Positions 9,793 to 51,138 of a DNA stretch of 64,000 nt are shown here, one piece after another. Where the stretch lies: the IMG/VR virus record IMGVR_UViG_3300003877_000001, positions 124,001-188,000 of that record. One strand, given 5' to 3'. Each line of letters opens with the position of its first letter. Position 1 is the stretch's first letter. Both the position numbers and the translations under genes were made by a program. A model generated the notes under the pieces. That model had not been told where the DNA came from and ran no database searches. It saw only the letters and a list, made by a program, of their open reading frames with translations.

Positions 9793-10461
9793 ATGAAAGT
9801 TACAGTAGATGCAGTCGTATTCTCGTATTATGAAGATGAATTAAAAGTTCTTTTAATTAAAAGAGCATTTGAACCATACTTAGATATGTTTGCTTTAGCA
9901 GGGGGATTTCTTTTAGATAATGAAACAGCAGAGGATGGGGTACTTAGACAATTAAAGGAAGAAACCAATGTTGAGTTGGATTATTTAGAACAACTATGTA
10001 CATTTACTGATGTTGATCGTGATCCTAGAGAGAGAATAATCTCAATAGCACATTATGGATTAATTAATCCCAATAAACATAGTTTAATTACTAATATTCA
10101 TGCAAAAGAAGTTAAATGGTTTCCAACATATGGAATAAAATATATTCCATTAGCCTTTGACCATATGGGAATTTTTGAATATGCATTAGAGAGATTGAGA
10201 AATAAATTACAATACGAACCTATTGGTTTTGAATTATTACCAAAATATTTTACTATGAGTGAACTATTAGCATTATATAATGCAATATTAGGTAAAGAAT
10301 TAGATAGACGTAATTTTAATAAGAAAATATTAAGCTATGGATTACTTACAGAAACAACTTTCAAATCGGTGGGTGGTGTTGGTAAACCAGCAAAACTATA
10401 TGAGTTCAACAAAGAAAAGTACGATGAACTCAAAAAAACAGGATTAAACTTTGAATTGTAA
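9793..10461 (+). CDS. nrtR: NrtR-family regulator (Nudix + winged helix)
   Basis: VTVDAVVF..LLIKR, degenerate Nudix box, RDPRER, LAFDH, FTMSEL..LY..ILGKELDRRNF, GKPAKLY. Confidence 0.85.
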   Translation: MKVTVDAVVFSYYEDELKVLLIKRAFEPYLDMFALAGGFLLDNETAEDGVLRQLKEETNVELDYLEQLCTFTDVDRDPRERIISIAHYGLINPNKHSLITNIHAKEVKWFPTYGIKYIPLAFDHMGIFEYALERLRNKLQYEPIGFELLPKYFTMSELLALYNAILGKELDRRNFNKKILSYGLLTETTFKSVGGVGKPAKLYEFNKEKYDELKKTGLNFEL

Positions 10462-10581
10462 TAAGATAAATGCTCAATTTGTGGATATATTGCACCATTT
10501 GAATTGTTTGGCAATAAATGACCTATTTGTGGATTAGAGTATATTGATGATGACGAAGAAGAATATTACTAAATAAAAATT

Positions 10582-10976
10582 ATGAAAAGTGTAAATAATA
10601 AAATAAAGAAACCATTTGTATCAATAGGATTTGATGCAACAGGAAAATTAACATTTAATGTTGATTTAAACAAAACAAAACAAAAAAACTAAACACCGAA
10701 CAATTAGGTGATTTAGGTGGTGCATTTCAAGATGCATTCAATACCATTAATAATAGTGATAGGAAACCTGTATTACATATTTTTGATTTATATAAGAGAA
10801 AAACAGGAATTAATATTAAACCTATCACTATAATTGAATTGGAAGAAATTAAAACATATATTCGCAATGGTGAAAAATTGATGGCAGTTAAAATCTTTAA
10901 AGATTATACTTCTGAAGGTTTAAGACAATCAAAAGATTTTATTGATTTTTTAATTAACTATATGAAGTATTCATGA
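10582..10976 (+). pseudogene. frameshifted ORF with L7/L12 C-terminal-like motif
   Basis: Frame breaks in the AAAAC repeat near 10670-10690; C-terminus KLMAVKIFKDYTSEGLRQSKDFID. Confidence 0.45.
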
Positions 10977-11566
10977 TAGTACCAATAAGATTATATGGTG
11001 ATGTATGTTTAAAAGAAGAGGCGTATGATGTTGATCTTGAACAAGATGATAATATTGTTGATTTAGTTAAAGATTTATTTGATACATTAAATACATCAGG
11101 TTCTGGTGTTGGTTTAGCTGCTACTCAATTAGGTGTGCCTTTAAGAGTATTTGTTGCAAAACATAATGATTTTCAATCTGAATTCATTAATTCAGTAATT
11201 TTAACTAAAAGTGGTGAATTAGAATCAGCAGAAGAAGGATGCTTATCAATACCAAATGTTGGTATTGATATTGAAAGACCTAAAGCAATTACATTATCAT
11301 ATCAAGTTTTAGATGATGGTGTATTAATTAATAAGACAGAAGAATTTGAAGGTTATATTGCTAGAATAATTCAACACGAAATTGATCATCTTAATGGGAT
11401 ATGTATAACAGATAAAGTTAAAGGGTTAGCAAGAACAATATTACAACCAAAATTGAAAAAGATATTGTTAGGTAGAACACAATATAGATATCCTACACTA
11501 CATAAAACATATCCAGATTATAAAAATGTAAGTGAAGAAATAATTAATAAATATATAAAAGAATGA
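10973..11566 (+). CDS. def: peptide deformylase
   Basis: GVGLAATQ, EGCLS, QHEIDHLNG. Confidence 0.95.
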   Translation: MIVPIRLYGDVCLKEEAYDVDLEQDDNIVDLVKDLFDTLNTSGSGVGLAATQLGVPLRVFVAKHNDFQSEFINSVILTKSGELESAEEGCLSIPNVGIDIERPKAITLSYQVLDDGVLINKTEEFEGYIARIIQHEIDHLNGICITDKVKGLARTILQPKLKKILLGRTQYRYPTLHKTYPDYKNVSEEIINKYIKE

Positions 11567-11952
11567 CGGTACAAAACACAATAATGACTGATCTTAAAAT
11601 AGCCATGAAAAATGGACAAACAAACGCAAAAAATTTATTGCGAGTTGTTATTGGTGAATTTAACAGAGAAGGTAAAACAGTATCTGATGAAAGAGCAATT
11701 GCTATTATGAAAAAAATGGTTGAAAATGCTAAAGATCAAGGAAATGAAATTGAAGTAACTATTCTTGAAGCATATCTTCCACAACAAATGGACGAATTTG
11801 AACTTAAAAGAGTTTTAATGAATCACATTATGAATTTAAATTCACCTTCCATGAAAGATATGGGGAGAGTTATGGGTGAATTAAAAGTAGTATATGGTGG
11901 ACAATATGATGGTAAAATGGCATCTACTATTGTTAGAGAATTATTAAAATAA
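11563..11952 (+). CDS. GatB/YqeY domain protein
   Basis: DLKIAMK, EVTILEAYLPQQM, MKDMGRVMG..DGK. Confidence 0.85.
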   Translation: MTVQNTIMTDLKIAMKNGQTNAKNLLRVVIGEFNREGKTVSDERAIAIMKKMVENAKDQGNEIEVTILEAYLPQQMDEFELKRVLMNHIMNLNSPSMKDMGRVMGELKVVYGGQYDGKMASTIVRELLK

Positions 11953-12351
11953 TGAAATTATTTGATGTAATTATAGATGGTGGTTATAAGGGACATTATG
12001 TTGAAGCTAATGGATATGATGAAGCAGCTAATAAATTGTTAAAATTTTTAAAATTTGAAAATGAAACAAAATCTGTTTTAGATGATGATGGGTCACTTAA
12101 AAAAGATGTGAATGATATTGAAGTGATATCAGTGAAAATAGTTGCTGATTTTATAATAAAATAAAAGAGGGTATTACAAAGCTAGTTGAGAATGTGACGG
12201 TATTAGTGCAGAAGAGGTCAATAGGTAAGGAGTATAATGAAGCAATAGTCATTCAAATTATACAAATCAGTCCGAACAACTAAAAGTGACTTACCCTTTT
12301 TTTATTTAAATAAATAGGTTTTACCCTTAGAAAATAGAAATTACCCTTGGT

Positions 12352-12690
12352 ATGAACAAAAAAAAGAAAATACGACAAAATTTTAGAGATTCCGTGTTTG
12401 CACGTGATAAACATAAGTGTCGTAAATGTGGTGCAGAAAACGTTGATTTAGATGCACATCACATTACAGATAGAAATAAAATGCCAAATGGTGGATATAT
12501 TAAAGAAAATGGTATATCTTTGTGTCAAGAAGAATGTCATATTAAAGCAGAAGAATTTCATTCTTCAAATGGTGAACATTGTGAAAAGGGTTTTCATCCT
12601 AATGATCTTTATGAATTAATTGGATCAAGTGAAAAAGAAGCATTCGATGCATCAATAATGTTAACCAAAAATGGTTTGATAAATATGTAA
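12352..12690 (+). CDS. HNH domain protein
   Basis: RDKHKCRKCG..LDAHHI..NGISLC..CH. Confidence 0.8.
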   Translation: MNKKKKIRQNFRDSVFARDKHKCRKCGAENVDLDAHHITDRNKMPNGGYIKENGISLCQEECHIKAEEFHSSNGEHCEKGFHPNDLYELIGSSEKEAFDASIMLTKNGLINM

Positions 12691-12994
12691 TTCAAGAATG
12701 TGTAGTATCTCAAATTAGATAAAATTATGAAAGCAACAGAAGCAAGAGCATTAGCATATAAAAAAAATATAAATGATACAAATAGTCAATATGCTAAAAT
12801 TATAGAAAAAATAATTTTTGAAGCAAAAAAAGGTAATTATAATATGGATTGGTATGAATCATTTAATGATGTTGTTCGAGAAAAATTAGAATCACAAGGA
12901 TATATTGTTGGAAAAACCCATCACGATCAACGAGATGGTTCTACAACAAAAATAAAATGGTAACCTTTAGGACATCCTAAACGTATATACTAAT

Positions 12995-13627
12995 ATGAAT
13001 TATTTAGAAGCAACAAAATATCCAAAGACAATGCATTTTGATTTCTCTGAATCATTACAAAATGATGATAGAAGATTAACGACATTGGAAGGTTTCATTG
13101 GTAAACGAGTAATCGTTACCGAGAAACTTGATGGAGAAAATTCGACAATTTACAATGACTATTACCATCCAAGATCGGTAATTGATGATGGTCATGAATC
13201 TAGAAATTGGCTTAAAGGGTATATACCCAATTTTCAGTATAAAATTCCTAAATATTGGAGGGTATGTGGTGAAAGTATGTATGCTGAACATTCAATAAAA
13301 TATGAAGAATTAAACACATTCTTCTATGCTTTTAGCATGTGGGATAATTTAAATATGTGTATCTCTTGGGATGAATTTGAACACCATTGTGATATATTAG
13401 ATATTGAACACGTTCCTGTTCTTTATGATGGTGTTTTCGATTATGTTAAAATAAAAGAGATTTATGAAAATTTAGATTTTAATAAACAAGAAGGTATTGT
13501 TGTTAGAGTTGCTTGTAAATTTCGTTATGATGAATTTCAAACACATACTGCCAAAGCAGTTAGACCTGCACATGTATCAACAGATGAACATTGGAAAAAA
13601 ACTTGGAAACCAAATAAATTAAAATAA
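12995..13627 (+). CDS. second RNA ligase family protein
   Basis: KYPKT.H, TEKLDGEN, CGE, EGIVVR. Confidence 0.85.
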   Translation: MNYLEATKYPKTMHFDFSESLQNDDRRLTTLEGFIGKRVIVTEKLDGENSTIYNDYYHPRSVIDDGHESRNWLKGYIPNFQYKIPKYWRVCGESMYAEHSIKYEELNTFFYAFSMWDNLNMCISWDEFEHHCDILDIEHVPVLYDGVFDYVKIKEIYENLDFNKQEGIVVRVACKFRYDEFQTHTAKAVRPAHVSTDEHWKKTWKPNKLK

Positions 13628-13858
13628 TGGATAGAAATTGGATATTTAGAATATTAGGAATTGTAGTGAATTTTGCACTACTCTATATTGTTGGTGCATT
13701 TATTGCTTGGGATGCAAACCCATTGCATTGGTGGATAATAACATCGACATTAGGAAGAGTATTATTTATGTTTTTTGCTTTTGCAAATGTTGCAATAAAT
13801 TTAAGTGAAAATTTAAGTGATAATTAAAATAATAATGAAATTTATAAAAAATGTTTAG

Positions 13859-14323
13859 ATGAATAATAAACACATACGCATTTACATAGACATGGATAAT
13901 GTTTTATGTGATTATCAAAAAGCACATGACGAAGCAATAAAGAATAAACCTGAAATTGTTTATCCACAATCACAATATGGTTTCTTTAGAGATTTAGAAC
14001 CAACTAATTGTGCATTGATGGGATTTACTGTATTATCTAAAAACTTTGATGTTTGGATATTAACAGCACCATCAGTACAAAATCCAATGTGCTATACTGA
14101 AAAAAGAGAATGGGTAGAGAAAAATTTAGGTTTTGATGCTGCTAAACGATTAATATTATCACCAGATAAATCACTTTTAATTGGTGATTATCTTATTGAT
14201 GATATGGTAGAAGGTAGAGCAAAACAAAACGAATTTAATGGAACTCACATTGTTTTTGGGAATGAAGTATATCCTGATTGGTTATCAGTATTGGAATATT
14301 TCAAACAATACTTTAAAACATAA
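13859..14323 (+). CDS. 5'(3')-deoxyribonucleotidase (HAD)
   Basis: IYIDMDNVLCD, ILTAP, K..WV, GDYLIDD. Confidence 0.85.
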   Translation: MNNKHIRIYIDMDNVLCDYQKAHDEAIKNKPEIVYPQSQYGFFRDLEPTNCALMGFTVLSKNFDVWILTAPSVQNPMCYTEKREWVEKNLGFDAAKRLILSPDKSLLIGDYLIDDMVEGRAKQNEFNGTHIVFGNEVYPDWLSVLEYFKQYFKT

Positions 14324-14397
14324 AAACATGAAAAATTACGAAGAACTAACAATACTTTAAAACATAAAAACATGAAAAATTACGAAGAACTAACAAT
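14304..14397 (+). repeat. 44-bp exact tandem duplication spanning a gene junction
   Basis: AACAATACTTTAAAACATAAAAACATGAAAAATTACGAAGAACT twice; ATGs at 14328 and 14372. Confidence 0.85.
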
Positions 14398-14836
14398 TGA
14401 ATTAATTGATTATTATAAAAATAAATATGATGGTGAATTAATTATAAAATCAATTGAATACAAAACAGTATATATTAATGGAAATCATATTAAAAAATTA
14501 GAACATGTCTATGAAATTTATGTTCTTTTAGATTTATTAACCCCAAATGCAAATTCTTGGAATATTCCGAATTTTTTTAAAAGTAAAGTTTCTTTTGAAA
14601 ATGCAATTAAAATGTTTAAAGTTGCTGTAAATGGATATTTAGAAGCCTTATTAATTGAAAAAGAGTTTGTAGAAATAAGTTCAGAGAAAAGACTTTTAGT
14701 TGATTTATTATCAAAAGATATTAATTCTTTAAACGAAGAAGATTTTGATTTCATGATTTCACATTATCTAAAAATAGAAGAATATTTGAAAGTTCAAAAA
14801 TATGAAAATTTAAAAAAAAAATATTATGAAAAATAA
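14372..14836 (+). CDS. hypothetical protein
   Basis: 154-aa ORF overlapping the next start. Confidence 0.6.
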   Translation: MKNYEELTIELIDYYKNKYDGELIIKSIEYKTVYINGNHIKKLEHVYEIYVLLDLLTPNANSWNIPNFFKSKVSFENAIKMFKVAVNGYLEALLIEKEFVEISSEKRLLVDLLSKDINSLNEEDFDFMISHYLKIEEYLKVQKYENLKKKYYEK

Positions 14837-15734
14837 AAAAATAATTCTTCTCTGTGGAATCCCTGCTAGTGGAAAATCTACATGGGCAAATAAATTTATA
14901 TTAAATAATTCTAATTATGTTAGAATTAATAGAGATATGTATCGTTTAATGCTTGATGGTTCTCAAATAATGGATTTTAAGGGAGAAAAGTTAGTAACTG
15001 AATTAGTTAATAATGCAATTGTTTTGGCTACAAAGTCTAAGTATAACGTACTTGTTGACCAAACTAATGTTAACTTAAAGTACTTGAATGAAATGGTTGC
15101 ATTTTGTGAAAAAATTGCAGATGTTGAGTTTAAAATATTCGATATAACAGAAAAAGTCGCCATCGAAAGAGACTCAAATAGAGATGCTAAAGTAGGTGCA
15201 AAAGTAATCAAAAAAATGTACAAAAACTACTTAAATCTATTCTCTTCTAATTTCGATTTCTCAACAAGAAAAAGAAAACCACATATTGCTACCAACATCA
15301 AGTGGGAGCGTGATGGTACTTTACCAGATGCAGTGATTTTTGACATTGATAGTACTATAGCACATACTCAAGGTAAAAGAGGGATATTTGATTGGGATAA
15401 AGTTAATCTTGATATTGTAGATGAAATTGTTCTTGAAACAATTAAATCATATAAGGACTATGGTTATAAGATTATCTTTGTTACGGGTAGAGATGGTGTT
15501 TCACGAAAAATGACAGAAGATTGGTTAATACATAATAAAATACCTTTTGATATGTTATTCACTAAACCTAAAAATGATTTCAGAAAAGATATTATAAATA
15601 AAACAGAAATTTATCATAATTTCATTAAACCAAATTATAATGTATTAGCAGTTTATGATGACCGTAATTCTGTTTGTAAAATGTGGAGAAATTTAGGAGT
15701 AAAATGCTACCAAGTTCAAGAGGGTGATTTTTAA
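14826..15734 (+). CDS. pseT: polynucleotide 5'-kinase/3'-phosphatase
   Basis: P-loop GIPASGKST and RINRD; HAD FDIDST, VTGR, YDDR. Confidence 0.9.
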   Translation: MKNKKIILLCGIPASGKSTWANKFILNNSNYVRINRDMYRLMLDGSQIMDFKGEKLVTELVNNAIVLATKSKYNVLVDQTNVNLKYLNEMVAFCEKIADVEFKIFDITEKVAIERDSNRDAKVGAKVIKKMYKNYLNLFSSNFDFSTRKRKPHIATNIKWERDGTLPDAVIFDIDSTIAHTQGKRGIFDWDKVNLDIVDEIVLETIKSYKDYGYKIIFVTGRDGVSRKMTEDWLIHNKIPFDMLFTKPKNDFRKDIINKTEIYHNFIKPNYNVLAVYDDRNSVCKMWRNLGVKCYQVQEGDF

Positions 15735-15767
15735 TCCTCATTTTTTTTTTATTAAATAATAAATAAT

Positions 15768-16190
15768 ATGATAAAACAATTAGAAGTTTACAAGAAGTTT
15801 CAGATGAAATATCCTAAATCAATTTTAGGTGGTAGTTTTGGATTATTCCTTAGAGGAATTGATTTAAAAAGAAATTTAAAATATTCTGATTTGGATATTA
15901 CGACCCCTGAATTTACACCTAAAGGTGGATTAGATAATGATAAAAGTAGTTCAGAGGATTTTGACTTTACATTATATATACATAACAATAATCATTATCT
16001 TAAAATGGATATACGTGTAGTTGAAGACCATAAATATGATGTTGTAAATTACGAAGGATTTGACTTTAACGTAAAAACAAAGAAAGATATATTATATTGG
16101 AAACAACAATATGCTGAAAAGGGGGTAGAAAAACATATTGATGATTTAATAACAATAGCAACTGGTGTTAGACCCAAACGATCCATATGA
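15768..16190 (+). CDS. nucleotidyltransferase-like protein
   Basis: LGGSFGL...SDLDI motif. Confidence 0.5.
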   Translation: MIKQLEVYKKFQMKYPKSILGGSFGLFLRGIDLKRNLKYSDLDITTPEFTPKGGLDNDKSSSEDFDFTLYIHNNNHYLKMDIRVVEDHKYDVVNYEGFDFNVKTKKDILYWKQQYAEKGVEKHIDDLITIATGVRPKRSI

Positions 16191-16244
16191 TTTACCGTTT
16201 TAATAACTTATAAAATATTTTTAAAAATACTTGACTTTATTATT

Positions 16245-16310
16245 ATAATAGTGTAACTTTGACACATATTAAACGTATTTATAAATGAATTAGTGTATTA
16301 AATACATATA
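16245..16310 (+). promoter_or_regulatory. two candidate NrtR operators overlapping an ECF-like promoter
   Basis: TAGT-GT-aactttg-AC-ACATA and TAGT-GT-attaaat-AC-ATA (GT-N7-AC); TGTAAC-N16-CGTAT at 16252-16278. Confidence 0.6.
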
Positions 16311-16328
16311 GACTAAAATAGTTATATT

Positions 16329-17234
16329 ATGAGAGAAGAAATAAAAGAATATACAATCGGAGTTATAATTGGAAGATTCCAAATACATGAACTTCATGAT
16401 GCACATAAAGAGATGATTAGTGAAGTACTAAGTAGACACCAAAAGGTTATACTATTTTTAGGGGTATCACCTACATTATCAACAAGAAGAAATCCTTTAG
16501 ATTATCGCTCAAGAAAATTAATGATTGAAGAGATATATGGAAATGAAATGATTATCTTACCTATCAACGATAGAAAGTCTGATGAAATCTGGTCAGACCA
16601 AGTAGATAGTAAAATCAGAGAGGTAGAGCCAATTGGTTCTGTTGTATTATATGGATCAAGAGATTCATTTATTCCTCATTATAAAGGAAAGTATGATACT
16701 ATTGAATTAGTTCCTAAATCATTTATTTCTGCAAGCGAAGTAAGAAAAGAAATTTCTAAAAGAGTTGAAAGAAACAAAGATTTTAGAGCAGGAGTTATTT
16801 ACTCAACATATAATACATATCCAACAGTACATCCCGTTATAGATGTTGCCATTTTAAATGAAGATGCAACTGAAGTATTATTGGGAAGAAAAAAAAACGA
16901 ACAACTTTTTAGATTTGTTGGTGGATTTACCGATGTAACTGATGAATCGTATGAACAAACAGTTGTAAGAGAAGCACATGAAGAAACTGGTCTTGCTGTT
17001 GGTGATGTTAAATACATTACTTCAACAAGAGTAGATGATTGGAGATATAGATCAAATAATGAGCGTTCAGTAATGACTTCATTTTTCAAAGCAAAGAAAA
17101 TCTTTGGTATGGCAAAACCCAATGATGATATTGTAGCAGTTAAATGGCATCAAATTTATACTTTACGACCTAATGATGTTGTTGGTGAACACGAAAGATT
17201 GGTTGTTGCATTAAAAGAAAACTTAAAACTATAA
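16329..17234 (+). CDS. nadM: bifunctional NMN adenylyltransferase / Nudix ADP-ribose hydrolase
   Basis: GRFQ..H.AH, RNPL, ISASEVR; Nudix GGF..VREAHEETGL; DD. Confidence 0.9.
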   Translation: MREEIKEYTIGVIIGRFQIHELHDAHKEMISEVLSRHQKVILFLGVSPTLSTRRNPLDYRSRKLMIEEIYGNEMIILPINDRKSDEIWSDQVDSKIREVEPIGSVVLYGSRDSFIPHYKGKYDTIELVPKSFISASEVRKEISKRVERNKDFRAGVIYSTYNTYPTVHPVIDVAILNEDATEVLLGRKKNEQLFRFVGGFTDVTDESYEQTVVREAHEETGLAVGDVKYITSTRVDDWRYRSNNERSVMTSFFKAKKIFGMAKPNDDIVAVKWHQIYTLRPNDVVGEHERLVVALKENLKL

Positions 17235-17238
17235 AATC

Positions 17239-18726
17239 ATGAAAAATATAATAAATTTAATATTAAAAACAGATAGTTATAAATTAGGTCATTGGCAACA
17301 ATATCCAACAGGAATGAGAAAAGTGTATTCTTATATGGAAAGCAGAGGGGGTTTATTTCCTAAAACATTATTTACTGGATTAAACATTTATCTAAAAAAA
17401 TATCTCAAGGGTGCTGTTGTAACAATGGAAGATATTGATTATGCTGAAAAATTTACAGAAGAACATTTAGGTAGAAAACTATTTAATAGAGATAAGTGGG
17501 AATATATTGTTAAACGATATGGTGGTAAATTACCCATAAGAATTAAAGCAGTTAAAGAAGGTTCTTTAGTTCCAGTTAGTAATGTTTTATTGACAATAGA
17601 AAGTACCGACCACAATTGTTATTGGTTAACAAATGTTCTTGAAACTTTATTAATGAAACTATGGTATCCAACAACAGTAGCAACAAATGGATTTTATAGT
17701 AAACTTTTAATTAGTCAATATTTAAATAAAACAGCAGAAAACAAAGATTCTAATATTTGGAAATTACACGACTTTGGTTATAGAGGTGTATCTAGTGAAG
17801 AAACGGCAGGAATTGGTGGTATGGCACATCTTATTAACTTTAAGGGTAGTGACACCATTGAGGGAATTCTTTATGCTAGAGAGTATTATAATGAACATAT
17901 GGCAGGGTTTTCAGTTCCAGCGTCTGAACATTCAGTAGCATCTTCATTTGGTAAAGATTTCGAAGAAGAATATTTTTTAAATATGTTAAAACAATACCCA
18001 ACAGGTTTAGTATCAATAGTATCAGATACATATAGTGTTTTTAATTTTGTAGAAACAATGTCAACGAAATATAGAAAAGAAATCATAGAAAGAGATGGGA
18101 CTGTGGTATTTAGACCAGATAGTGGGCATCCTGTTGAAATAAACTCAAGACTGATTGATTTACTTTGGAATAAATTTGGTGGAACATATGTAAATGGTTA
18201 TAAATTATTAGATTCTCATGTAAGACTAATCCAAGGTGATGGTATTGACATTAAGATGATTAATGATATATTACATATGGGCGAACTTAAAGGATATTCT
18301 GCCGATAATTGGGTGTTTGGTTCAGGTGGTGCATTATTACAAAAGTGGACTAGAGATACTAATGAATTTGCAATTAAAGCATCCTATGGTGAAAGAGAAG
18401 TTGATGGAATTGTTAGTAAATTTTCAATAAGCAAAGACCCTATAACTTCTAAAAGTAAACGCTCAAAGGGTGGGATATTTAAATTAATACCAACAGAAGA
18501 TAGTTCATTCTTAACGATTTCATCTGAAAATTCAAAAGATAAAGGTACTTTTAGTAATTATGTTGATTGTTTAGATGTTGTATTTGAAAATGGTGAAATA
18601 AAAAGAGAGCAAACCATAGAAAATATTCGTAATATTGCAGATAATCATCTTGAAGTTGAATTAAAAGAAAATTACGATGTTATCGATAAACTAAATTTTG
18701 AAAAAAATTATGAAAAATTAAATTAA
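17239..18726 (+). CDS. nadV: nicotinamide phosphoribosyltransferase
   Basis: TDSYK..H, LHDFGYRG, PASEHS, VSDTY, RPDSG, IQGDG, FGSGG. Confidence 0.93.
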   Translation: MKNIINLILKTDSYKLGHWQQYPTGMRKVYSYMESRGGLFPKTLFTGLNIYLKKYLKGAVVTMEDIDYAEKFTEEHLGRKLFNRDKWEYIVKRYGGKLPIRIKAVKEGSLVPVSNVLLTIESTDHNCYWLTNVLETLLMKLWYPTTVATNGFYSKLLISQYLNKTAENKDSNIWKLHDFGYRGVSSEETAGIGGMAHLINFKGSDTIEGILYAREYYNEHMAGFSVPASEHSVASSFGKDFEEEYFLNMLKQYPTGLVSIVSDTYSVFNFVETMSTKYRKEIIERDGTVVFRPDSGHPVEINSRLIDLLWNKFGGTYVNGYKLLDSHVRLIQGDGIDIKMINDILHMGELKGYSADNWVFGSGGALLQKWTRDTNEFAIKASYGEREVDGIVSKFSISKDPITSKSKRSKGGIFKLIPTEDSSFLTISSENSKDKGTFSNYVDCLDVVFENGEIKREQTIENIRNIADNHLEVELKENYDVIDKLNFEKNYEKLN

Positions 18727-20807: not shown

Positions 20808-21492
20808 ATGAAATGGAATAAAAACGAAATAGATTACTGTAAAGAAAAATTTTCTAATGGAGAATCTCTAATTGATATTAGTAATGAATTAAATAGAACA
20901 ACAAAAGCAATTCAAATTAAAATGAGTCGATTAGGTGTTTTTAGACCACAAAAAAAATATTATATGACCTATATTTGTGGAAATTGTAAAACAACATTTA
21001 CTGCATTAATAAGTGAGAAAAGAAAATATTGTTCTGAACAATGTGCATCAATAATAAATAATAAAAAAAGAAAAAAAATGTAAACGTTGTAAGCAAACAA
21101 TTAATAATAATAATAACATTTATTGTAGTAAAAAATGTGAAATGTCAAACAAAGAAAATTATTATTTTACTAAAATAGAAAATAATGATTTAAATGATAT
21201 TAATCATAATACAGCAGAAAGATGGGTTAAAAGATATTTAATTCACAAATATGGTGAAAAATGTATGAAATGTGGTTGGAGTGAAATTCATAAAATAACA
21301 AAAAAAGTGCCGATCCAATTAAACCATATTAATGGTGATTCAGATAATAATAATTTATTAAATGTTGAGTTACTTTGCCCTAATTGTCATTCATTAACAC
21401 ATAATTTTGGATCATTAAATTTTGGTAATGGTAGAACAAAAAGAAAATTAGAGAGAAATAAAAGATATAAAAAAGTTAGCGTGTCCGATTGA
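20808..21492 (+). pseudogene. HNH endonuclease split by a frameshift in an A-run (ORFs 20808-21083 and 21142-21492)
   Basis: Second frame is open from 21079 (CKRC..YCSKKC); QLNHING..N...LLCPNCH; stop codon lies inside tRNA-Cys. Confidence 0.7.
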
Positions 21493-21545
21493 TAAGGTGG
21501 ATGGTTGCAACCCATTTTATGCAGGTTTGAATCCTGTCGCTAACT
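21475..21545 (+). tRNA. tRNA-Cys(GCA)
   Basis: GTTAGCG/CGCTAAC, U73; GATGG-ttGCAac-CCATT. Confidence 0.85.
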
Positions 21546-21665
21546 CTAATTATACCGAATTCGGTATAAATAAAATCATAGTAATGTAATGACCTCAAAA
21601 GTCATTTTGTTACTATGAATAAACATCGGGGATGATATACTATTTTATCGTAGTACCCCGTCCAT

Positions 21666-22034: not shown

Positions 22035-22146
22035 CAATCCTGAGTACAGGTTAACTCTGTGATGTTGTGTGACATATAAGTTTAGAGGTTGAGAAATCAA
22101 TACGGCTTCAATGAGAGAATAACGTAATTTATTCAAAGTCACAATT

Positions 22147-23146: not shown

Positions 23147-23174
23147 CAAAAAATTGACTCAATGAGTCAAATAT

Positions 23175-23248
23175 TGTCTCGTAGTTCAACTGGTGAGAGC
23201 ACCACGCTGATAACGTGGAAGTTATGGGTTCGAATCCCATCGAGACAA
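23175..23248 (+). tRNA. tRNA-Ile(GAT)
   Basis: TGTCTCG/CGAGACA; CCACG-ctGATaa-CGTGG. Confidence 0.9.
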
Positions 23249-23321
23249 CTTCATAGATGCAGGTTCGAATCCTGTCTCTTCCTTCGGGGAGTGTGGTGTA
23301 ACTGGAAAGCATAATGGACTT
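23249..23321 (+). ncRNA. circularly permuted tRNA-like RNA (3' half, TTCG, 5' half)
   Basis: TTCAT-agat-GCAGG-ttcgaat-CCTGT-CTCTTCC-ttcg-GGGAGTG-tg-GTGT-aactggaaa-GCAT-a-ATGGA-ctt. Confidence 0.75.
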
Positions 23322-23411
23322 AGAGGGTTGGCAGAGTCTGGCTTATTGTACTAGTCTTGAAAACTAGCATACGTTCATAGCGTATCGTGGGTTCGAATCC
23401 CACACCCTCTG
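23322..23411 (+). tRNA. tRNA-Ser(TGA)
   Basis: AGAGGGT/ACCCTCT, G73; CTAGT-ctTGAaa-ACTAG; long V-arm. Confidence 0.9.
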
Positions 23412-23562: not shown

Positions 23563-23632
23563 ATGTAAATAGCATAATGGCAATGCAGCACCATAAAAGG
23601 TGTGTATGTAGGTTCGATTCCTATTTTACTAA
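23563..23632 (+). pseudogene. degenerate tRNA (6-nt anticodon loop)
   Basis: D- and T-arms present; GCACC-ataaaa-GGTGT; mispaired top of acceptor. Confidence 0.5.
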
Positions 23633-24461: not shown

Positions 24462-24518
24462 AGGATAGCATTATTGTCTTCGAAACAAAAGGTCAGGGTT
24501 CAAATCCTTGTGGGGGTA
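24447..24518 (+). tRNA. tRNA-Arg(TCG)
   Basis: GCCTCTA/TGGGGGT; TTGT-ctTCGaa-ACAA. Confidence 0.82.
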
Positions 24519-24523
24519 CAATT

Positions 24524-24565
24524 GCGAGTGTGGTGCTAACGGTAACACATTTCCAATCACTCGCT
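24524..24565 (+). pseudogene. internally deleted tRNA-Gly (acceptor + D-arm only)
   Basis: GCGAGTG/CACTCGC-T with a D-arm and TTCCAA remnant; no T-arm. Confidence 0.55.
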
Positions 24566-24633
24566 CAAATAATATTTCAGCTAGATGAAATTTAAATGTG
24601 GAAACTACGTAACGGTTTAAACAGTTATTTAAT

Positions 24634-24707: not shown

Positions 24708-24772
24708 CTAATTCAAGTGTTTAATGATTGCAAATCATAGCAGACCTTCCAAGTCATGGCTTGAGTTTTTAT

Positions 24773-27480: not shown

Positions 27481-28478
27481 ATTTATTATATTTGTAATAT
27501 GAAAAGAGAAAACATAGTCCTCACCAATGAAGAAGGTGAATTTGCATTAACAATAATGTATCCAATGTCGGGTGAATATGAAGGAAGAATATTCGTTTTA
27601 TATGAAGATGCATGGGGTGATGCAGACCTTAAAATAATGACCCCTAAAGCAGTTGCAAAGAACTACAATGTTAGTTTAGAGGAAATTAATGTATTTATAG
27701 AGACTGTAAAAAAAGAAAAAACAAATGTAAATGAAAAATAATTTTAAATTAAAGTAATAAATAAACAAGAAGCTGTTGATAAAGCCAATTCTTTAACGTA
27801 TCTTGCAGATATGAAACAGAATAATAAGGGGGAGTGTAATGCACCCCATTAATTTAATTAATATGAAAAAAGTAAGAATCGAAATACCTTTAGATTTTGC
27901 CGTTGAAATTGCAACATACGGTGAATCAGGTACAATCTCAAGATTTGTTCAAATGTCTATTGAAAAAGAATTAACTAGACTTGGTTATAATAAAGAACTA
28001 GATATTGCTAGAGAAGAAAAAACTAAAAAATTGTTTAATTCATTAAATAAAACACTTGGATCAGATTCTGTGAATAAAATTCAAAAGGCAATAAAAATTG
28101 GTACTGATGCAATAAAAGTATCTAATAGAATGAACGACAATAATTAATATTATGGGAAGAGTAAATGATTTAATTTTATGTGAATGTCATTGTGATGAAC
28201 ATCAAATGATTTTTAAATATGATAAAGAACCTGAATGGGAAAATGTTTTTATATCGTATTACTTACAAAGTGACACATTTTGGGGGAGAATAAAAACAGC
28301 AATTAAATATATTTTTGGTTATAAATCAAGATATGGTGATTTTGGGGAAATTATTTTAGAGCCAAATAAAGATACTGTTGAAAAGTTTGAAAATGTTGTA
28401 AAACATTTAAAATTGGTTATGAAAACCCAAGAAGAAAAAAGAGAACGAATTAAAAACAAATTATAGTATGATTATAGT

Positions 28479-29456
28479 ATGATTGTTGTAACTGGTGCTG
28501 GTGGGTTTATTGGATCAAGGTTAGTTGAATATTTAAATAAACAAGAACACGAAGATATTATTGTTGTTGATGATTTTAATATTATTAAGAAAAAACAAAT
28601 TTTAAAACAATTTGAGTTTTTATTATACGTAGATAGGGAAAATTTCATCAATTTTTTAGATAGTAATGTAAAAAAAATTGATATTATTTATCATTTAGGT
28701 GCGAAAACAGATACAATAGAACCAGACAAAGAAATCTTTAATAAATTAAATTTAGAATATTCCAAAGACATCTATAATATTTGTGCAGATTATGGTATTC
28801 CTTTAATATATGCATCATCTGCTGCAACATATGGTAGAGGTGAATTTGGATACGAAGATGATGAAGAAGCTATAAAACATTTAAAACCATTAAATGCTTA
28901 TGGTGAATCAAAACAAGAATTTGATATTTGGTTATTAGAAGAACAAAAAACAAGAAGACCACCATTTGTTATTGGTCTTAAATTCTTCAATGTATATGGT
29001 TATGGTGAATATAATAAAGGTCGTATGGCTTCAGTTGTATATCATGCAATGAATCAAATAATGGAAACAAATAAAATGAATTTATTTAAATCACATAATC
29101 CTGATTATAAGGATGGTGAACAAATGAGAGATTTTATTTATGTTGATGATGTTGTAAAAATTTGTTATGAATTTATGACTAAAGGTTATGGTAATTCTGG
29201 TATATATAATGTAGGAACTGGAAAAGCTAGAACATTTCTGAGTTTAGCAAAAGGAGTATTTAAAGCATTAGATATTAAAGAAAATATTGAATTCATTGAT
29301 ACTCCAAAAGATTTAAGAGAGAATTACCAATATTATACACAAGCAACAACTAATAAGTTAGAAGAAATCGGAATAGATATTGATTTTATTGGTTTAGAAG
29401 ATGGTATCAATCAATATTTAGATACAATACTTTTCTATGAATATGTGAACATGTAA
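28479..29456 (+). CDS. rfaD: ADP-L-glycero-D-manno-heptose-6-epimerase
   Basis: IVVTGAGGFIGS, YASSAATYG, PLNAYGESK, FFNVYG..KGRMASV, RDFIYVDD, YQYYTQA. Confidence 0.9.
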   Translation: MIVVTGAGGFIGSRLVEYLNKQEHEDIIVVDDFNIIKKKQILKQFEFLLYVDRENFINFLDSNVKKIDIIYHLGAKTDTIEPDKEIFNKLNLEYSKDIYNICADYGIPLIYASSAATYGRGEFGYEDDEEAIKHLKPLNAYGESKQEFDIWLLEEQKTRRPPFVIGLKFFNVYGYGEYNKGRMASVVYHAMNQIMETNKMNLFKSHNPDYKDGEQMRDFIYVDDVVKICYEFMTKGYGNSGIYNVGTGKARTFLSLAKGVFKALDIKENIEFIDTPKDLRENYQYYTQATTNKLEEIGIDIDFIGLEDGINQYLDTILFYEYVNM

Positions 29457-33716: not shown

Positions 33717-33786
33717 GTTGCCATAGGTTGGTGTAAAATATTAGTCTCTAAAACTAATAACGAGAGTTCGAATCTCTCTGGCAGCA
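33717..33786 (+). tRNA. amber-suppressor tRNA (anticodon CTA)
   Basis: GTTGCCA/TGGCAGC-A; TTAGT-ctCTAaa-ACTAA; GAGAG-ttcgaat-CTCTC; weak D-arm. Confidence 0.78.
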
Positions 33787-34251
33787 CTTAAATATTAAAA
33801 ATATGAAAGATAATGTAGAATATAAAATAGTTTCTAGTGATTCAACTGATTTCATGGGAAATAGAGTAAGTAAATTAATGTCAGAGGGTTGGGTATTATA
33901 TGGAAGTCCATATTTTAATAGTCAAAAAGAATCTAATTGTCAAGCAATGGTTAGACACCCAAAAACTAAAGAAATTTTAAACGATTAACATGTCAAAAGT
34001 ATATGTTGATTTAAGAGTAGAAGCATTTGAAGAAGATTTAAATGATTTTCTAACATTATTAGGAAAAATTAATTATACAGGACGTATTGGTGCAAGCAGA
34101 AGCATTAAAGTAAATATTGATGGTGATGGTTCTGGTTATATTGGTGTTAAAAGACTAAGTGATAAAAAACCAATACATGAATGGGTAAATTTAGATGAAA
34201 AACAATTAAAAAAAGTGTCTGACGGTGAAGACTTTGACGACCATTATATAG

Positions 34252-35050: not shown

Positions 35051-35164
35051 ATGAACAAAGACATTATTACTTGGAGAGATTTCGGTGGCTAGACTCAAGA
35101 CCATAAATTAGTTACCATAACTAGACAGGATTTATTTAAAATAGTATTTATATTAAAAGATACT
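35051..35164 (+). other. amber-interrupted 5' fragment of a Pth2-like gene (MNKDIITWRDFGG*TQDHKLVTITRQDL...)
   Basis: TAG at 35090-35092; frame stays open into the ORF at 35165. Confidence 0.6.
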
Positions 35165-35881
35165 ATGAATACATCTGAATTTATTAAAAAAGCACAAAAT
35201 ATTCATGGGGAAAAATATTCTTATGATATTAGTAATTATTTAAATAATAAAACTAAGATAATTATTATTTGCTCTAAACATGGTGAATTTCAACAAACAC
35301 CAAGTAGACATTTAACAGGCGATGGATGTCCCAAATGTGCTAGAGAATTTGTTAGTAAATTAAATACTAAAACAACCAAACAATTTATTGAAGAATCAAA
35401 ATTAATTCATTCTAATAAATATGATTATAAGAAATCTAATTATATTTCAATATACGAACCACTTACAATTATATGTTCAAAACATGGTGATTTTCAACAA
35501 AAACCACATACACATTTAAAAGGTTCTGGTTGTCCATATTGTGGAAATAACTCAAAAGGTGAATCTAAAATAAAAAGAATATTAGATGCTAATAAAATTG
35601 ATTATATTTCACAAAAATATTTTAATAATTGTAAGGGAATTAAAAGAAAATTACCGTTTGATTTTTATTTACCAAAACAAAATATTTTAATAGAATATGA
35701 CGGAGTACAACATTTTAGACCTGTCGATATTTTTGGTGGTCAAATTGGGTTTGAAAAAACTAAAACTAATGATACTATAAAAAATAAATACTCACTAGAT
35801 AATGGTATAAAATTATTTAGAATAAAATATAATGAAAATCTTGAAAATAAACTAAATAGAATAATTATGGAAAATACTTAG
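35165..35881 (+). CDS. DUF723-repeat / PD-(D/E)XK homing endonuclease
   Basis: Two IICSKHG.F.Q.P..HL.G.GCP repeats; FDFYLP..IEYDG.QH. Confidence 0.85.
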   Translation: MNTSEFIKKAQNIHGEKYSYDISNYLNNKTKIIIICSKHGEFQQTPSRHLTGDGCPKCAREFVSKLNTKTTKQFIEESKLIHSNKYDYKKSNYISIYEPLTIICSKHGDFQQKPHTHLKGSGCPYCGNNSKGESKIKRILDANKIDYISQKYFNNCKGIKRKLPFDFYLPKQNILIEYDGVQHFRPVDIFGGQIGFEKTKTNDTIKNKYSLDNGIKLFRIKYNENLENKLNRIIMENT

Positions 35882-36262
35882 ATACATCCAAATTTAATTA
35901 CTATTGTGAGAAGCGATATAAAAGTAGGTATGATGATAGCACAAAGCTGCCATTCTGTTGCAGACTTCGCATATCACAAACCTTACGAATTTAAAAATTG
36001 GAGAGAAAATTCTAATTACAAAATATGTCTTGCATCTAAAGACGAGAAATCTCTAATTAAACTTTACAATAAACTTATCGACAAAGGAGCACAAGTAATT
36101 GCTTTTCATGAACCTGATTTAGGTAATGAAATGACAGCAATGACATTACTTGGTGAACCTGATATTAAAAAACATACGTCTTATTTACCATTAGCTGGTA
36201 AAGAATATGAGAGTGTAGATAATCCCCCGACTCTAATTAAATTAAATAAATATGAAAGATAG
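35867..36262 (+). CDS. peptidyl-tRNA hydrolase (PTH2-like), with an in-frame TAG at codon 5 if started at ATG 35867
   Basis: MENT*IHPNLITIVRSDIKVGMMIAQSCHS..W..KICL..FHEPDLGNEMTA..LPL. Confidence 0.75.
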
Positions 36263-50388: not shown

Positions 50389-51138
50389 ATGAAGAAAATT
50401 GCAATTTTATTTTCTGGTGGTTTAGATTCAACATATTTAATGTGGAAAGCATTAAAAGGTGGTCATGAAGTATATCCAATTTATATTGAAATTAAAAATA
50501 ATAACACAAAATCACTAATTGAAAAACAACAATCTGAATTAATTATTAATGAACTTAATAAGGAATTTAATAAGAATATATTACTAAATAAAACAATAAC
50601 TATCGATGTGCATAACCACAATAATTTAGGGTTTGCTCAACCATTTTTATGGTCAACATTGGTTAATGTTGGTTTACCAAAGGGTGTTACTGAATTACAA
50701 ATAGGATATGTTTATGGTGATAGTGTAATTGCATATATTCCAGAAATAAAAAATTTATATAATTCTGCAAAACCATTTATGGTGGATCAACCAAAATTAA
50801 CCTTTCCAATAATTAAATCAGATAAAAATGATATTGTATACGAATTACCTAAACAATATAGAAAATTAGTTGTCTCTTGCGAAAATATTCAATTAAAAAA
50901 ATATTCAATAACTAATAAAGAAACTGGTTTTAAATATAGATTTTTCGAACCTTGTGGTGATTGTGAAATATGTAAAAAAATAATTGAAAATAAATATTAT
51001 AATTGTGAGGAAACTAAAAAGAATTATATATCTGCTGAAAAAAACTATAATGAATGGAGATATATTGAATTCAAAAATAAACATAATGGAGAAATTATGT
51101 TAATGAATAAAAGTAAAGAAGTATTATTAAAAAAATAA
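50389..51138 (+). CDS. QueC-like PP-loop ATPase
   Basis: FSGGLDST; SC...PCG.C..C. Confidence 0.7.
   Translation: MKKIAILFSGGLDSTYLMWKALKGGHEVYPIYIEIKNNNTKSLIEKQQSELIINELNKEFNKNILLNKTITIDVHNHNNLGFAQPFLWSTLVNVGLPKGVTELQIGYVYGDSVIAYIPEIKNLYNSAKPFMVDQPKLTFPIIKSDKNDIVYELPKQYRKLVVSCENIQLKKYSITNKETGFKYRFFEPCGDCEICKKIIENKYYNCEETKKNYISAEKNYNEWRYIEFKNKHNGEIMLMNKSKEVLLKK

What the first reader, a model, noticed from the sequence alone, without database searches (positions are those of the whole stretch)
23249..23321. Circularly permuted, anticodon-less tRNA with a UUCG-capped acceptor stem
Seen: the interval between the tRNA-Ile discriminator and the tRNA-Ser 5' end is exactly a tRNA 3' half followed by a 5' half. 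All four stems pair (ATGGA/TTCAT, GTGT/GCAT, GCAGG/CCTGT, GGGAGTG/CTCTTCC with G3-U70). The acceptor ends are joined by a C(UUCG)G loop and the break falls in the anticodon loop. Established: permuted tRNA genes are known from some algae and archaea, and G3-U70 is the AlaRS determinant. Inference: processing of the neighbours releases a mimic of anticodon-cut tRNA (nuclease decoy or ligase substrate), or the phage ligases and RNase P mature it.
Basis: partly seen in the sequence, partly recalled or inferred. Interest (0 to 1): 0.85.

Follow-up and report, generated by a model that had tools for sequence, protein, structure and literature searches.

The report
Minimal Y-RNA-like tRNA mimic in phage
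The 73 bases between two tRNA genes of this jumbo phage fold as a tRNA whose acceptor end is sealed by a UUCG loop and whose ends fall in the anticodon loop; this shape is already known from bacterial and phage Y RNAs (YrlA), but this copy is an unusually stripped-down version with no Ro60-binding stem, placed so that ordinary tRNA processing would cut it out.

Summary
Window 23249-23321 is a complete, circularly permuted cloverleaf: closing stem, T arm, 7-bp acceptor hairpin capped cUUCGg, D arm. All canonical tertiary nucleotides are present and its G+C matches the tRNAs.

It is not a new kind of RNA. Rfam YrlA aligns weakly to exactly this interval, covering only the tRNA-like module. [quoted passage not shown]

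An architecture search of viral contigs found over 100 such modules. Their acceptor strands pair without being required to, about half lie next to a Ro60/TROVE gene, and many sit inside phage tRNA arrays. A covariance model built without the window copy scores it 49.3 bits, the best hit in the window.

The unusual points are these:
- There is no Ro60-binding or distal helix, and no TROVE gene in 64 kb.
- The element sits flush between tRNA-Ile and tRNA-Ser. Only one other of 164 modules does this.
- Relatives lack it at the orthologous junction.

It cannot mature into a decoding tRNA, because three anticodon-loop bases are missing. G3:U70 is not a class feature.

Best reading: a stand-alone, non-chargeable tRNA mimic excised by tRNA processing. 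A relic remains possible. Verdict: new variant of a known kind.

The parts
23175..23248 (+). tRNA-Ile(GAU), upstream neighbour. No encoded CCA. Its 3' processing would create the 5' end of the element.
   Evidence: ARAGORN and Rfam tRNA, 70.1 bits.
23249..23249 (+). Single C left 5' of the closing stem (tRNA position 38 equivalent).
   Evidence: Sequence.
23250..23254 (+). Closing (anticodon-stem-like) helix, 5' strand UUCAU (tRNA 39-43). Pairs 5/5 with 23314-23318.
   Evidence: (present in the MFE).
23255..23258 (+). Variable region AGAU. U48 can form the Levitt pair with A15.
23259..23275 (+). T arm: GCAGG / UUCGAAU / CCUGU, with G53:C61, U54:A58, U55 and C56.
23276..23293 (+). Closed acceptor hairpin: CUCUUCC - UUCG - GGGAGUG. 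7 positions, 6 paired, U6:U67 mismatch, G3:U70 wobble, cUUCGg tetraloop.
   Evidence: The same cap and 7-bp stem occur in over 100 viral modules.
23294..23313 (+). U8 G9, D arm GUGU / AACUGGAAA / GCAU (A14, A15, G18, G19, A21), and A26.
23314..23318 (+). Closing helix, 3' strand AUGGA (tRNA 27-31).
23319..23321 (+). CUU 3' overhang (tRNA 32-34 equivalent). It ends where RNase P would cut to make the tRNA-Ser 5' end.
   Evidence: Sequence. The RNase P site is inferred from the tRNA-Ser 5' end.
23322..23411 (+). tRNA-Ser(UGA), downstream neighbour.
12995..13627 (+). Context only: RNA ligase gene (210 aa).
   Evidence: Pfam PF09414, 1.8e-26. PHROG RNA ligase, 2.8e-61.
14826..15734 (+). Context only: T4-type polynucleotide kinase-phosphatase (Pnkp).
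   Evidence: Pfam HAD_PNKP 4e-43 plus a kinase domain. PHROG polynucleotide kinase, 1e-83.

Best explanation
The element is a stand-alone tRNA mimic of the YrlA (bacterial/phage Y RNA) type. It is a tRNA body read in permuted order (T arm, acceptor stem sealed by a cUUCGg loop, D arm) and closed by a 5-bp anticodon-stem-like helix.

It has no anticodon loop, no free CCA end and no Ro60-binding helix.

It is transcribed with the phage tRNA array. It would be released as an RNA of about 73 nt by the enzymes that mature its neighbours:
- a cut after the tRNA-Ile discriminator gives its 5' end;
- RNase P cutting at the tRNA-Ser 5' end gives its 3' end.

It folds into the tRNA L-shape but can neither be charged nor decode. 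It most likely acts by occupying a protein that recognises the tRNA elbow or body.

Shown: the structure, class membership at the level of the tRNA-like module, absence of the Ro60 parts, and tRNA-like composition.

Inferred: expression, processing, stability and the binding target.
For: Structure and tertiary nucleotides are complete.

Rfam YrlA aligns to 23248-23321 over model positions 19-90 only, the tRNA-like module.

The class is real and widespread:
- 109 of 121 pattern hits have >=6/7 acceptor pairs that the pattern did not require.
- All 7 acceptor pairs covary; 94% of cells are paired against 38-51% when partners are slid.
- 61 of about 120 module loci carry a TROVE gene, against 4 of 117 control loci.
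- A Ro-strand motif lies 22-25 nt upstream in 45 of 109 modules, against 3% of controls.

Model R1, built without the window copy, scores it 49.3 bits, the top hit in the window.

The closest homologue, L046, is 80% identical, with compensatory changes in the T and acceptor stems.

The element is 46.6% G+C, against a tRNA mean of 44%, spacers at 25% and ORFs at 21-26%.

Its halves are not copies of any resident tRNA.

A second, unrelated phage (L032) has the same flush arrangement.

Literature: YrlA modules fold like tRNA, are modified by TruB and DusA, and are described as resembling circularly permuted tRNAs with closed acceptor stems (PMC4201824; 10.1101/312249).
Against: There is no expression or processing data.

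The element is absent from the orthologous Ile(GAU)-Ser(UGA) junction in three relatives, so it is not conserved within the lineage. The one relative with a module (L125) has it at another junction, in a more complex, partly duplicated form.

The acceptor stem has a U:U mismatch.

Its D-stem sequence (GUGU/GCAU) differs from the conserved YrlA GCUC/GAGC.

The Rfam score (15.9 bits) is far below the gathering score of 69.

R1 also gives up to 40 bits to true tandem-tRNA junctions.

No binding partner is known, even for canonical YrlA modules.
Confidence: 0.55

Rival explanations
1. Non-functional relic. Either the leftover core of a full-length Y-RNA-like gene whose distal helix was lost when tRNA cassettes were shuffled by the array's homing endonucleases, or a half-register copy of a tandem tRNA pair. 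It is transcribed and degraded, or simply tolerated.
For: - Absent at the orthologous junction in L332, L333 and L337.
- The arrays are heavily shuffled and carry three HNH genes and one GIY-YIG gene.
- The closest homologue, L046, is a longer RNA with a distal helix.
- The flush minimal form is rare, 2 of 164.
- There is a U:U mismatch in the acceptor stem.
- Tandem duplicates can show cross-pairing.
- The same array holds other irregular tRNA-like genes.
Against: - G+C is at tRNA level in a 27% G+C genome, while neighbouring spacers are at 25%.
- All four helices and all tertiary nucleotides are intact.
- A perfect 5-bp closing stem replaces the distal helix.
- The boundaries coincide to within 0-3 nt with tRNA processing sites.
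- The halves do not match any resident tRNA.
Confidence: 0.3
2. Substrate of the phage's own RNA repair enzymes. The excised RNA carries a 5'-phosphate and a 3'-OH on a broken anticodon-loop-like end. The phage RNA ligase would seal it into a covalently closed, exonuclease-resistant circular tRNA mimic, or it would act as a competitor or decoy for enzymes that cut or sense broken tRNAs.
For: Pnkp and an RNA ligase are encoded 8-10 kb upstream in the same window. The predicted ends, from established RNase P and RNase Z chemistry, would be ligatable without end healing. The end geometry resembles an anticodon-loop break.
Against: Purely inferential. Closure would leave a 4-nt loop. The ligase belongs to the PF09414 family, whose preference for such a substrate is unknown. 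Class members with distal helices cannot work this way.
Confidence: 0.12
3. RNase P opens the acceptor loop and CCA is added, as reported for M. smegmatis YrlA. This would give a two-piece tRNA-like molecule that could be charged (G3:U70 suggesting alanine).
For: The acceptor stem has 7 positions, the feature linked to RNase P cleavage of M. smegmatis YrlA, which is cut and CCA-tailed in vivo (PMC4201824). G3:U70 is present.
Against: - The loop is a hyperstable cUUCGg tetraloop with no single-stranded leader.
- G1:C72 closing a UUCG loop is the rule in the class (85 of 108), which argues for a sealed end.
- G3:U70 occurs in only 10 of 108 members.
- The discriminator would be U, not A.
- There is a U:U mismatch at 6:67.
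Confidence: 0.06
4. A true circularly permuted tRNA gene, as in Cyanidioschyzon or Thermofilum, whose halves are joined and processed into a decoding tRNA.
For: The order is 3' half then 5' half, with the break in the anticodon loop. With a 3-nt filler it scores as a tRNA in 64 of 64 cases.
Against: The natural join has a 4-nt loop and is not recognised as a tRNA. There is no leader/trailer helix or bulge-helix-bulge motif, because the element abuts its neighbours. The literature search found no report of permuted tRNA genes in bacteriophages.
Confidence: 0.02
5. Tandem-tRNA junction artefact: the T arm of one real tRNA and the D arm of the next, read as one unit.
For: Such junctions score up to 40 bits with R1. 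The YrlA authors warn about them.
Against: No tRNA 5' half lies upstream of the T arm and no 3' half lies downstream of the D arm. tRNA-Ile and tRNA-Ser occupy those positions completely.
Confidence: 0.01

Closest known systems
YrlA Y RNAs of bacteria and phages (Rfam RF02553; Chen et al. 2014, PMC4201824; structure PDB 6cu1, bioRxiv 10.1101/312249)
   Same: - The same permuted order: closing stem, T arm, loop-closed acceptor-like stem, D arm.
- The same tRNA tertiary nucleotides.
- Occurrence in phages and next to tRNA genes.
- Rfam YrlA aligns to exactly this interval.
- TROVE-linked phage copies share the 7-bp stem with a cUUCGg cap.
   Different: - No Ro60-binding helix or conserved 5'-strand motif.
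- No TROVE gene in 64 kb.
- The D stem is GUGU/GCAU rather than GCUC/GAGC.
- The ends are set by abutting tRNAs.
- The Rfam score is far below the family threshold.
Full-length Y-RNA-like genes embedded in phage tRNA arrays (found here: L046, and the TTGGTC-loop subfamily L226...L316)
   Same: L046 is 80% identical over the module, with compensatory stem changes. These genes have the same D-arm type (GTGTA..TGG) and the same setting among tRNA genes.
   Different: They carry an 8-9 bp distal helix with covariation and extra hairpins, and lie 50-90 nt from neighbouring tRNAs. The window copy has none of this.
Circularly permuted tRNA genes of Cyanidioschyzon merolae and Thermofilum pendens (from general knowledge; reviewed in PMC4238349 and PMC3400036, which were found but not read)
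   Same: The 3' half lies upstream of the 5' half, the acceptor ends are joined by a short intervening sequence, and the break is in the anticodon loop.
   Different: Those genes encode complete tRNAs, matured through a bulge-helix-bulge cut and a circular intermediate. Here three loop bases are missing and no such motif or enzyme system is evident.
tmRNA tRNA-like domain, including two-piece permuted tmRNAs (general knowledge)
   Same: A tRNA mimic with a T arm, G3:U70 and no anticodon arm.
   Different: tmRNA has a free CCA end, a tag reading frame and pseudoknots. ARAGORN finds no tmRNA here, and the acceptor end is sealed.

Membership tests
YrlA (Y RNA-like, RF02553) | tRNA-like module: T arm, loop-closed acceptor-like stem and D arm in permuted order, closed by an anticodon-stem-like helix | tested here: met
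   (49.3 bits with an independent model of the module).
YrlA (Y RNA-like, RF02553) | tRNA tertiary-interaction nucleotides that give the L-shape (U8, A14, R15:Y48, G18, G19, U54:A58, U55, C56, G53:C61) | tested here: met
   The fold itself was not tested.
YrlA (Y RNA-like, RF02553) | Ro60-binding helix with a conserved 5' strand (GNCGAAN0-1G; in phages GGTTACTTC-like) | tested here: not met
   tRNA-Ile and tRNA-Ser abut the module. The YrlA alignment covers model positions 19-90 only. The motif is absent from the window.
YrlA (Y RNA-like, RF02553) | Encoded within about 4 kb of a Ro60/TROVE gene | tested here: not met
   A TROVE profile built from 40 phage proteins finds nothing in six-frame pieces of the 64-kb window at E<=10. 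The other 262 kb of the contig could not be read.
YrlA (Y RNA-like, RF02553) | Rfam gathering score (69 bits) | tested here: not met
   15.9 bits. TROVE-adjacent phage copies in L005-L007 also score only 33-44 bits, so the threshold is strict for phage variants.
YrlA (Y RNA-like, RF02553) | Conserved D- and T-stem sequences (GCUC/GAGC D stem) | tested here: not met
   The D stem is GUGU/GCAU. A minority subtype with GUGU occurs in TROVE-linked loci L007 and L017.
YrlA (Y RNA-like, RF02553) | Binds Ro60; modified by TruB and DusA | not testable with these tools
   Biochemical.
Circularly permuted tRNA gene | 3' half upstream of 5' half, with the acceptor ends joined by an intervening sequence | tested here: met
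Circularly permuted tRNA gene | The joined halves give a complete tRNA with a 7-nt anticodon loop | tested here: not met
   The natural join has a 4-nt loop and ARAGORN finds no tRNA. A tRNA is called only with a 3-nt filler.
Circularly permuted tRNA gene | Leader/trailer helix (bulge-helix-bulge) for endonuclease cutting and circularisation | tested here: not met
   There is no leader or trailer. The flanks are mature tRNA ends, and pairing does not extend beyond the 5-bp stem.
Tandem-tRNA junction (false YrlA) | The T arm and the D arm each belong to a complete neighbouring tRNA | tested here: not met
tmRNA / two-piece tmRNA | Free CCA acceptor end, tag reading frame, pseudoknots | tested here: not met
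   ARAGORN reports no tmRNA. The acceptor is sealed.

The most novel reading that the evidence does not exclude
Phage tRNA arrays carry a family of sealed-acceptor tRNA mimics that act as counter-defence decoys. This minimal copy, excised by RNase P and the 3' tRNA processing enzyme and possibly circularised by the phage's own RNA ligase, would imitate an anticodon-cut tRNA. It would titrate a host tRNA-directed nuclease or a sensor of damaged tRNA.

It would also be a living example of how Y RNAs arise from, or decay back to, half-register tRNA cassettes.
Probability: 0.2. Interest if true: 0.8.

Novelty: new variant of a known kind. Interest (0 to 1): 0.5.

Why it matters
No effector is known for the tRNA-like module of bacterial and phage Y RNAs. 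A natural copy that consists of the module alone would be a clean reagent for finding what the module binds.

- It has no Ro60 tether.
- It sits in a phage that also carries 27 tRNA genes, Pnkp, an RNA ligase and NAD-salvage genes.
- It is placed so that tRNA processing would release it.

The wider result is that sealed-acceptor tRNA mimics are common inside phage tRNA arrays, often with no Ro60 gene within the DNA fetched (usually less than 15 kb). The papers found here tie these RNAs to Ro60 loci and do not describe array-embedded copies without Ro60. This suggests these RNAs belong to the tRNA-centred arms race between phages and hosts.

Tried and rejected
- GenBank phages: only tRNA-level matches, no relative.
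- Exact 27-nt search of viral contigs: only the source contig.
- DUF2227 and 284-aa protein anchors in viral contigs: one tRNA-free relative.
- Metagenome scan with the 284-aa protein family: 80 relatives, almost none reaching a tRNA array. The R1 hits there (L134, L171) were true tandem-tRNA junctions.
- MFE folding: z = +1.0, uninformative.
- Strict GNCGAAN0-1G motif: rare even in TROVE-linked phage copies, 8 of 109. I replaced it with the phage variant [TA]ACTTC.
- Promoter and terminator scan: at background level.
- TROVE in relatives' loci: none, but these loci all sample one neighbourhood.
- TAG recoding: not evident in this window. TAG ends 10 of 65 long ORFs.
- The G3:U70 / AlaRS idea: rejected as a class feature.
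- Recent origin from a resident tRNA: rejected.
- I did not use the last viral scan to look for TROVE on the source contig. Only the best 80 hits are returned, so a diverged AT-rich copy would probably be missed.

Full report
WHAT IS THERE

The window is part of IMG/VR contig UViG_3300003877_000001, a 326-kb jumbo phage with 27% G+C. Window base 1 is contig base 124001. It holds 27 tRNA genes (26 from ARAGORN plus one that only Rfam finds), most of them in an array at 20.6-26.4 kb. Three HNH genes lie among these tRNAs and a GIY-YIG gene lies just upstream of the array.

tRNA-Ile(GAU) ends at its discriminator, A23248. tRNA-Ser(UGA) starts at 23322. The 73 nt between them read, in order:
- C
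- UUCAU
- AGAU
- GCAGG-UUCGAAU-CCUGU
- CUCUUCC-UUCG-GGGAGUG
- UG
- GUGU-AACUGGAAA-GCAU
- A
- AUGGA
- CUU

All canonical tertiary positions are present: U8, A14, A15:U48, G18, G19, A21, U54:A58, U55, C56, G53:C61, U33.

IS IT MORE THAN CHANCE?

- Rearranged in silico, the natural join (4-nt loop) is not called a tRNA. Any 3-nt filler gives a tRNA call, 64 of 64.
- The Rfam tRNA model scores the halves separately at 19.6 and 13.9 bits.
- In 648 real tandem-tRNA junctions, cross-pairing of >=6/7 acceptor positions together with 5/5 anticodon-stem positions occurs in 0.46%. Those cases involve complete tRNAs. Here neither half has its partner half, because the flanking positions are occupied by intact tRNA-Ile and tRNA-Ser.
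- The halves are no closer to any resident tRNA than genuine tRNAs are to each other, and the best matches for the two halves are different tRNAs.
- Thermodynamic folding alone is uninformative (z = +1.0).

WHAT KIND OF THING IS IT?

A degenerate architecture pattern (T loop, 10 nt, TTCG, 7 nt, TGG) found three other viral contigs. In all three the two 7-mers were complementary, although the pattern did not require it.

A permissive Rfam scan placed YrlA (RF02553, "Y RNA-like") on window 23248-23321. The hit covers model positions 19-90 of 114, which is the tRNA-like module, at 15.9 bits. The same scan found tandem YrlA hits of 33-44 bits in the three contigs. One of these contigs encodes a TROVE (Ro60) protein next to the RNAs.

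A broader pattern gave 119 or more loci:
- 109 of 121 hits had >=6/7 acceptor pairs, and 88 were perfect.
- 61 of about 120 loci encode a TROVE protein, usually adjacent. Only 4 of 117 loci fetched by an unrelated pattern do.
- 45 of 109 modules have the motif [TA]ACTTC 22-25 nt upstream of the T arm, against 3% of controls. This motif corresponds to the Ro60-binding strand.

On 47 independent copies the permuted cloverleaf is strongly supported. 94% of cells are paired, against 38-51% when the partners are slid, and all seven acceptor pairs change on both sides. I had preselected these rows for pairing, so the unfiltered 109 of 121 is the cleaner statistic.

The covariance model built from these 47 copies, which excludes the window copy, scores the element 49.3 bits (E about 1e-11). 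This is the best hit in the window. The next hits (<=31.6 bits) are tandem-tRNA junctions without an acceptor hairpin.

The literature describes this shape. YrlA RNAs combine a Ro60-binding helix with a domain that mimics the tRNA T arm, D arm and acceptor stem. M. smegmatis YrlA, which has a 7-bp acceptor stem, is cut by RNase P and CCA-tailed. The authors discard tandem tRNAs as false positives (PMC4201824). [quoted passage not shown]

HOW THIS COPY DIFFERS

- It has no room for a Ro60-binding or distal helix. It starts 0-1 nt after tRNA-Ile and ends 3 nt before tRNA-Ser.
- No TROVE gene is detectable in the 64-kb window at E<=10, nor in about 780 kb from relatives. The relatives' loci all sample one neighbourhood, and the rest of the source contig could not be read.
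- In a structure-based scan of everything fetched, I found 164 distinct orphan modules. 18 lie between two tRNAs within 100 nt. Only two are flush on both sides: this one and L032, from an unrelated phage.
- The closest homologue, L046, is 80% identical, with compensatory changes in the T and acceptor stems. It is the core of a longer RNA with an 8-bp distal helix, extra hairpins and its own promoter-like site, upstream of tRNA-Glu and tRNA-Asp.

The window copy therefore looks like the core module alone, with its own perfect 5-bp closing stem in place of the distal helix.

CONSERVATION

Relatives of this phage exist. 239 homologues of a neighbouring protein were found, and L125, L333 and L337 share 7-19 ORFs with the window at about 50% identity.

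At the orthologous Ile(GAU)-Ser(UGA) junction:
- L333 has 6 nt.
- L332 has 31 AT-rich nt.
- L337 has 53 nt with an unrelated hairpin.

L125 has a module (40.1 bits) at another junction, between tRNA-Phe and tRNA-Gly. It is part of a 147-nt unit with a duplicated T arm that spans from one tRNA to the next.

So the element is a lineage-specific cassette in arrays that are extensively shuffled. This neither proves nor excludes function.

Two points argue for maintenance:
- Its G+C is 46.6%, like the tRNAs (mean 44%) and unlike the spacers (25%) or ORFs (21-26%).
- Every helix and every tertiary contact is intact.

HOW IT MOST LIKELY WORKS

Shown: the fold potential, the sealed acceptor end, and the lack of an anticodon loop, a CCA end and any Ro60 parts.

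Inferred from established tRNA processing:
- Because the array's tRNA genes lack an encoded CCA, an endonucleolytic cut after the tRNA-Ile discriminator would define the 5' end.
- RNase P acting at tRNA-Ser would define the 3' end.
- Together these would release a 73-nt RNA with a 5'-phosphate and a 3'-OH.

Such an RNA cannot be charged or decode. It would present the tRNA elbow and body to proteins that recognise them.

The window also encodes Pnkp and an RNA ligase, which together form the phage repair pair for anticodon breaks. It also encodes QueC-like and NAD-salvage genes. A role in the tRNA-centred conflict with the host is therefore plausible but unproven. This could be as a decoy for a tRNA-directed nuclease or sensor, or as a ligase substrate that becomes a circle.

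The cUUCGg cap with a G1:C72 closing pair is the rule in the class, 85 of 108. G3:U70 is not, at 10 of 108. I therefore favour a permanently sealed end over RNase P opening and alanylation.

VERDICT

The finding is real and correctly described, but the kind is known. It is a YrlA-type tRNA mimic in a minimal form: it lacks the Ro60-binding helix and abuts tRNAs on both sides. It is a new variant of a known kind, not a permuted tRNA gene.

Function versus relic is unresolved. I put 0.55 on a functional stand-alone mimic and 0.3 on a relic.

Noticed in passing
L226, L231, L236, L240, L244, L245, L252, L279, L284, L285, L287, L295, L310, L316 (coordinates): A conserved subfamily of sealed-acceptor tRNA mimics inside phage tRNA arrays (7-24 tRNAs per locus; L226 and L231, short or partial loci, show 1-2).
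- 9-bp distal helix with covariation at 5 pairs.
- Conserved TTCAGCAA after the 5' strand.
- Acceptor loop TTGGTC(A).
- D arm GTGTAATGGTAGCAC.
- Upstream of the T arm, a hairpin with a 7-nt loop of the form CU-NNN-AA. Its middle triplet varies between close relatives (GAA, GTA, GCA, GGA, ACG, ATG), like an anticodon arm under diversifying change.
- TROVE lies within 1-5 kb in two of the loci.
   Followed up: partly
L338 4496-4571 (-); L330 16694-16765 (+); L339 8979-9049 and 10348-10408 (+): Further orphan modules in HNH-bearing tRNA arrays.
- L338 has the same D loop as the window copy (AACTGGAAA) and a hairpin after its D arm.
- L330 has a canonical-looking anticodon arm (CAATT-CTTGAAA-AATTG) after its D arm.
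- So the permutation break point differs between members (anticodon loop, variable region, position 26/27).
   Followed up: partly
L125 2911-3057: In the closest syntenic relative, the whole 147-nt gap between tRNA-Phe and tRNA-Gly folds as one unit (z = -3.6). It has two near-identical T arms, a 7-bp acceptor hairpin with a 10-nt loop (TTGGTGACAA), A8 instead of U8, and a GTGT D stem.
   Followed up: partly
window 23563-23632: A tRNA-like gene (Rfam 39 bits) with a 6-nt anticodon loop and two non-standard pairs at the end of the acceptor stem. ARAGORN reports a 2-nt anticodon. It is unlikely to decode normally.
   Followed up: partly
window 21475-21545: A Cys(GCA)-like tRNA found by Rfam (50 bits) but not by ARAGORN. 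The D loop lacks G18-G19 and the T loop has U at position 56. It overlaps the last 18 nt of the HNH ORF 21142-21492.
   Followed up: partly
window 33717-33787; L124 11653-11726; L333 12482; L337 15394: A tRNA with a CUA anticodon (amber suppressor type) is conserved in this phage lineage. TAG still ends 10 of 65 long ORFs in the window, so recoding is not evident here. Three same-frame ORF pairs are separated by a single TAG (28134-29453, 35093-36259, 61437-62324).
   Followed up: partly
window 9793-18726 and 50389-51138: A cluster of tRNA-repair and metabolic counter-measure genes:
- NrtR-like NUDIX regulator
- peptide deformylase
- YqeY
- RNA ligase
- NT5C nucleotidase
- Pnkp
- NMNAT/NUDIX
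- NAMPT (NAD salvage)
- further on, a QueC-like gene
   Followed up: partly
window 4821-8483: Ribonucleotide reductase large subunit interrupted by an intein with a LAGLIDADG endonuclease domain.
   Followed up: no
window 23154-23170: A perfect 7-bp hairpin (TTGACTC-AAT-GAGTCAA) fills the 26-nt spacer between tRNA-Thr and tRNA-Ile, just upstream of the element's transcription context. It is preceded by an A run, which reads as a T run on the minus strand. It could be a processing or termination signal.
   Followed up: no
window 21546-21665, 22035-22146, 24519-24633, 24708-24772: Four array spacers have 31-34% G+C, above the 25% spacer average, with weak R1 hits nearby (such as 24484-24554). 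They may hold degraded tRNA-like sequences or other small RNAs.
   Followed up: no
L105, L111, L009, L017, L023, L042, L052, L057: In several TTCG-capped modules ARAGORN calls a tRNA that overlaps the module's T arm and uses upstream sequence as a 5' half. So some Y-RNA-like genes may be annotated as tRNAs in phage genomes.
   Followed up: no
L124 3933-6191, L125 7008-9260, L126 2173-4425: Relatives carry a 750-aa VWA-domain protein two genes upstream of the 284-aa anchor gene. The window has no homologue of it. It is not hit by the TROVE profile.
   Followed up: partly
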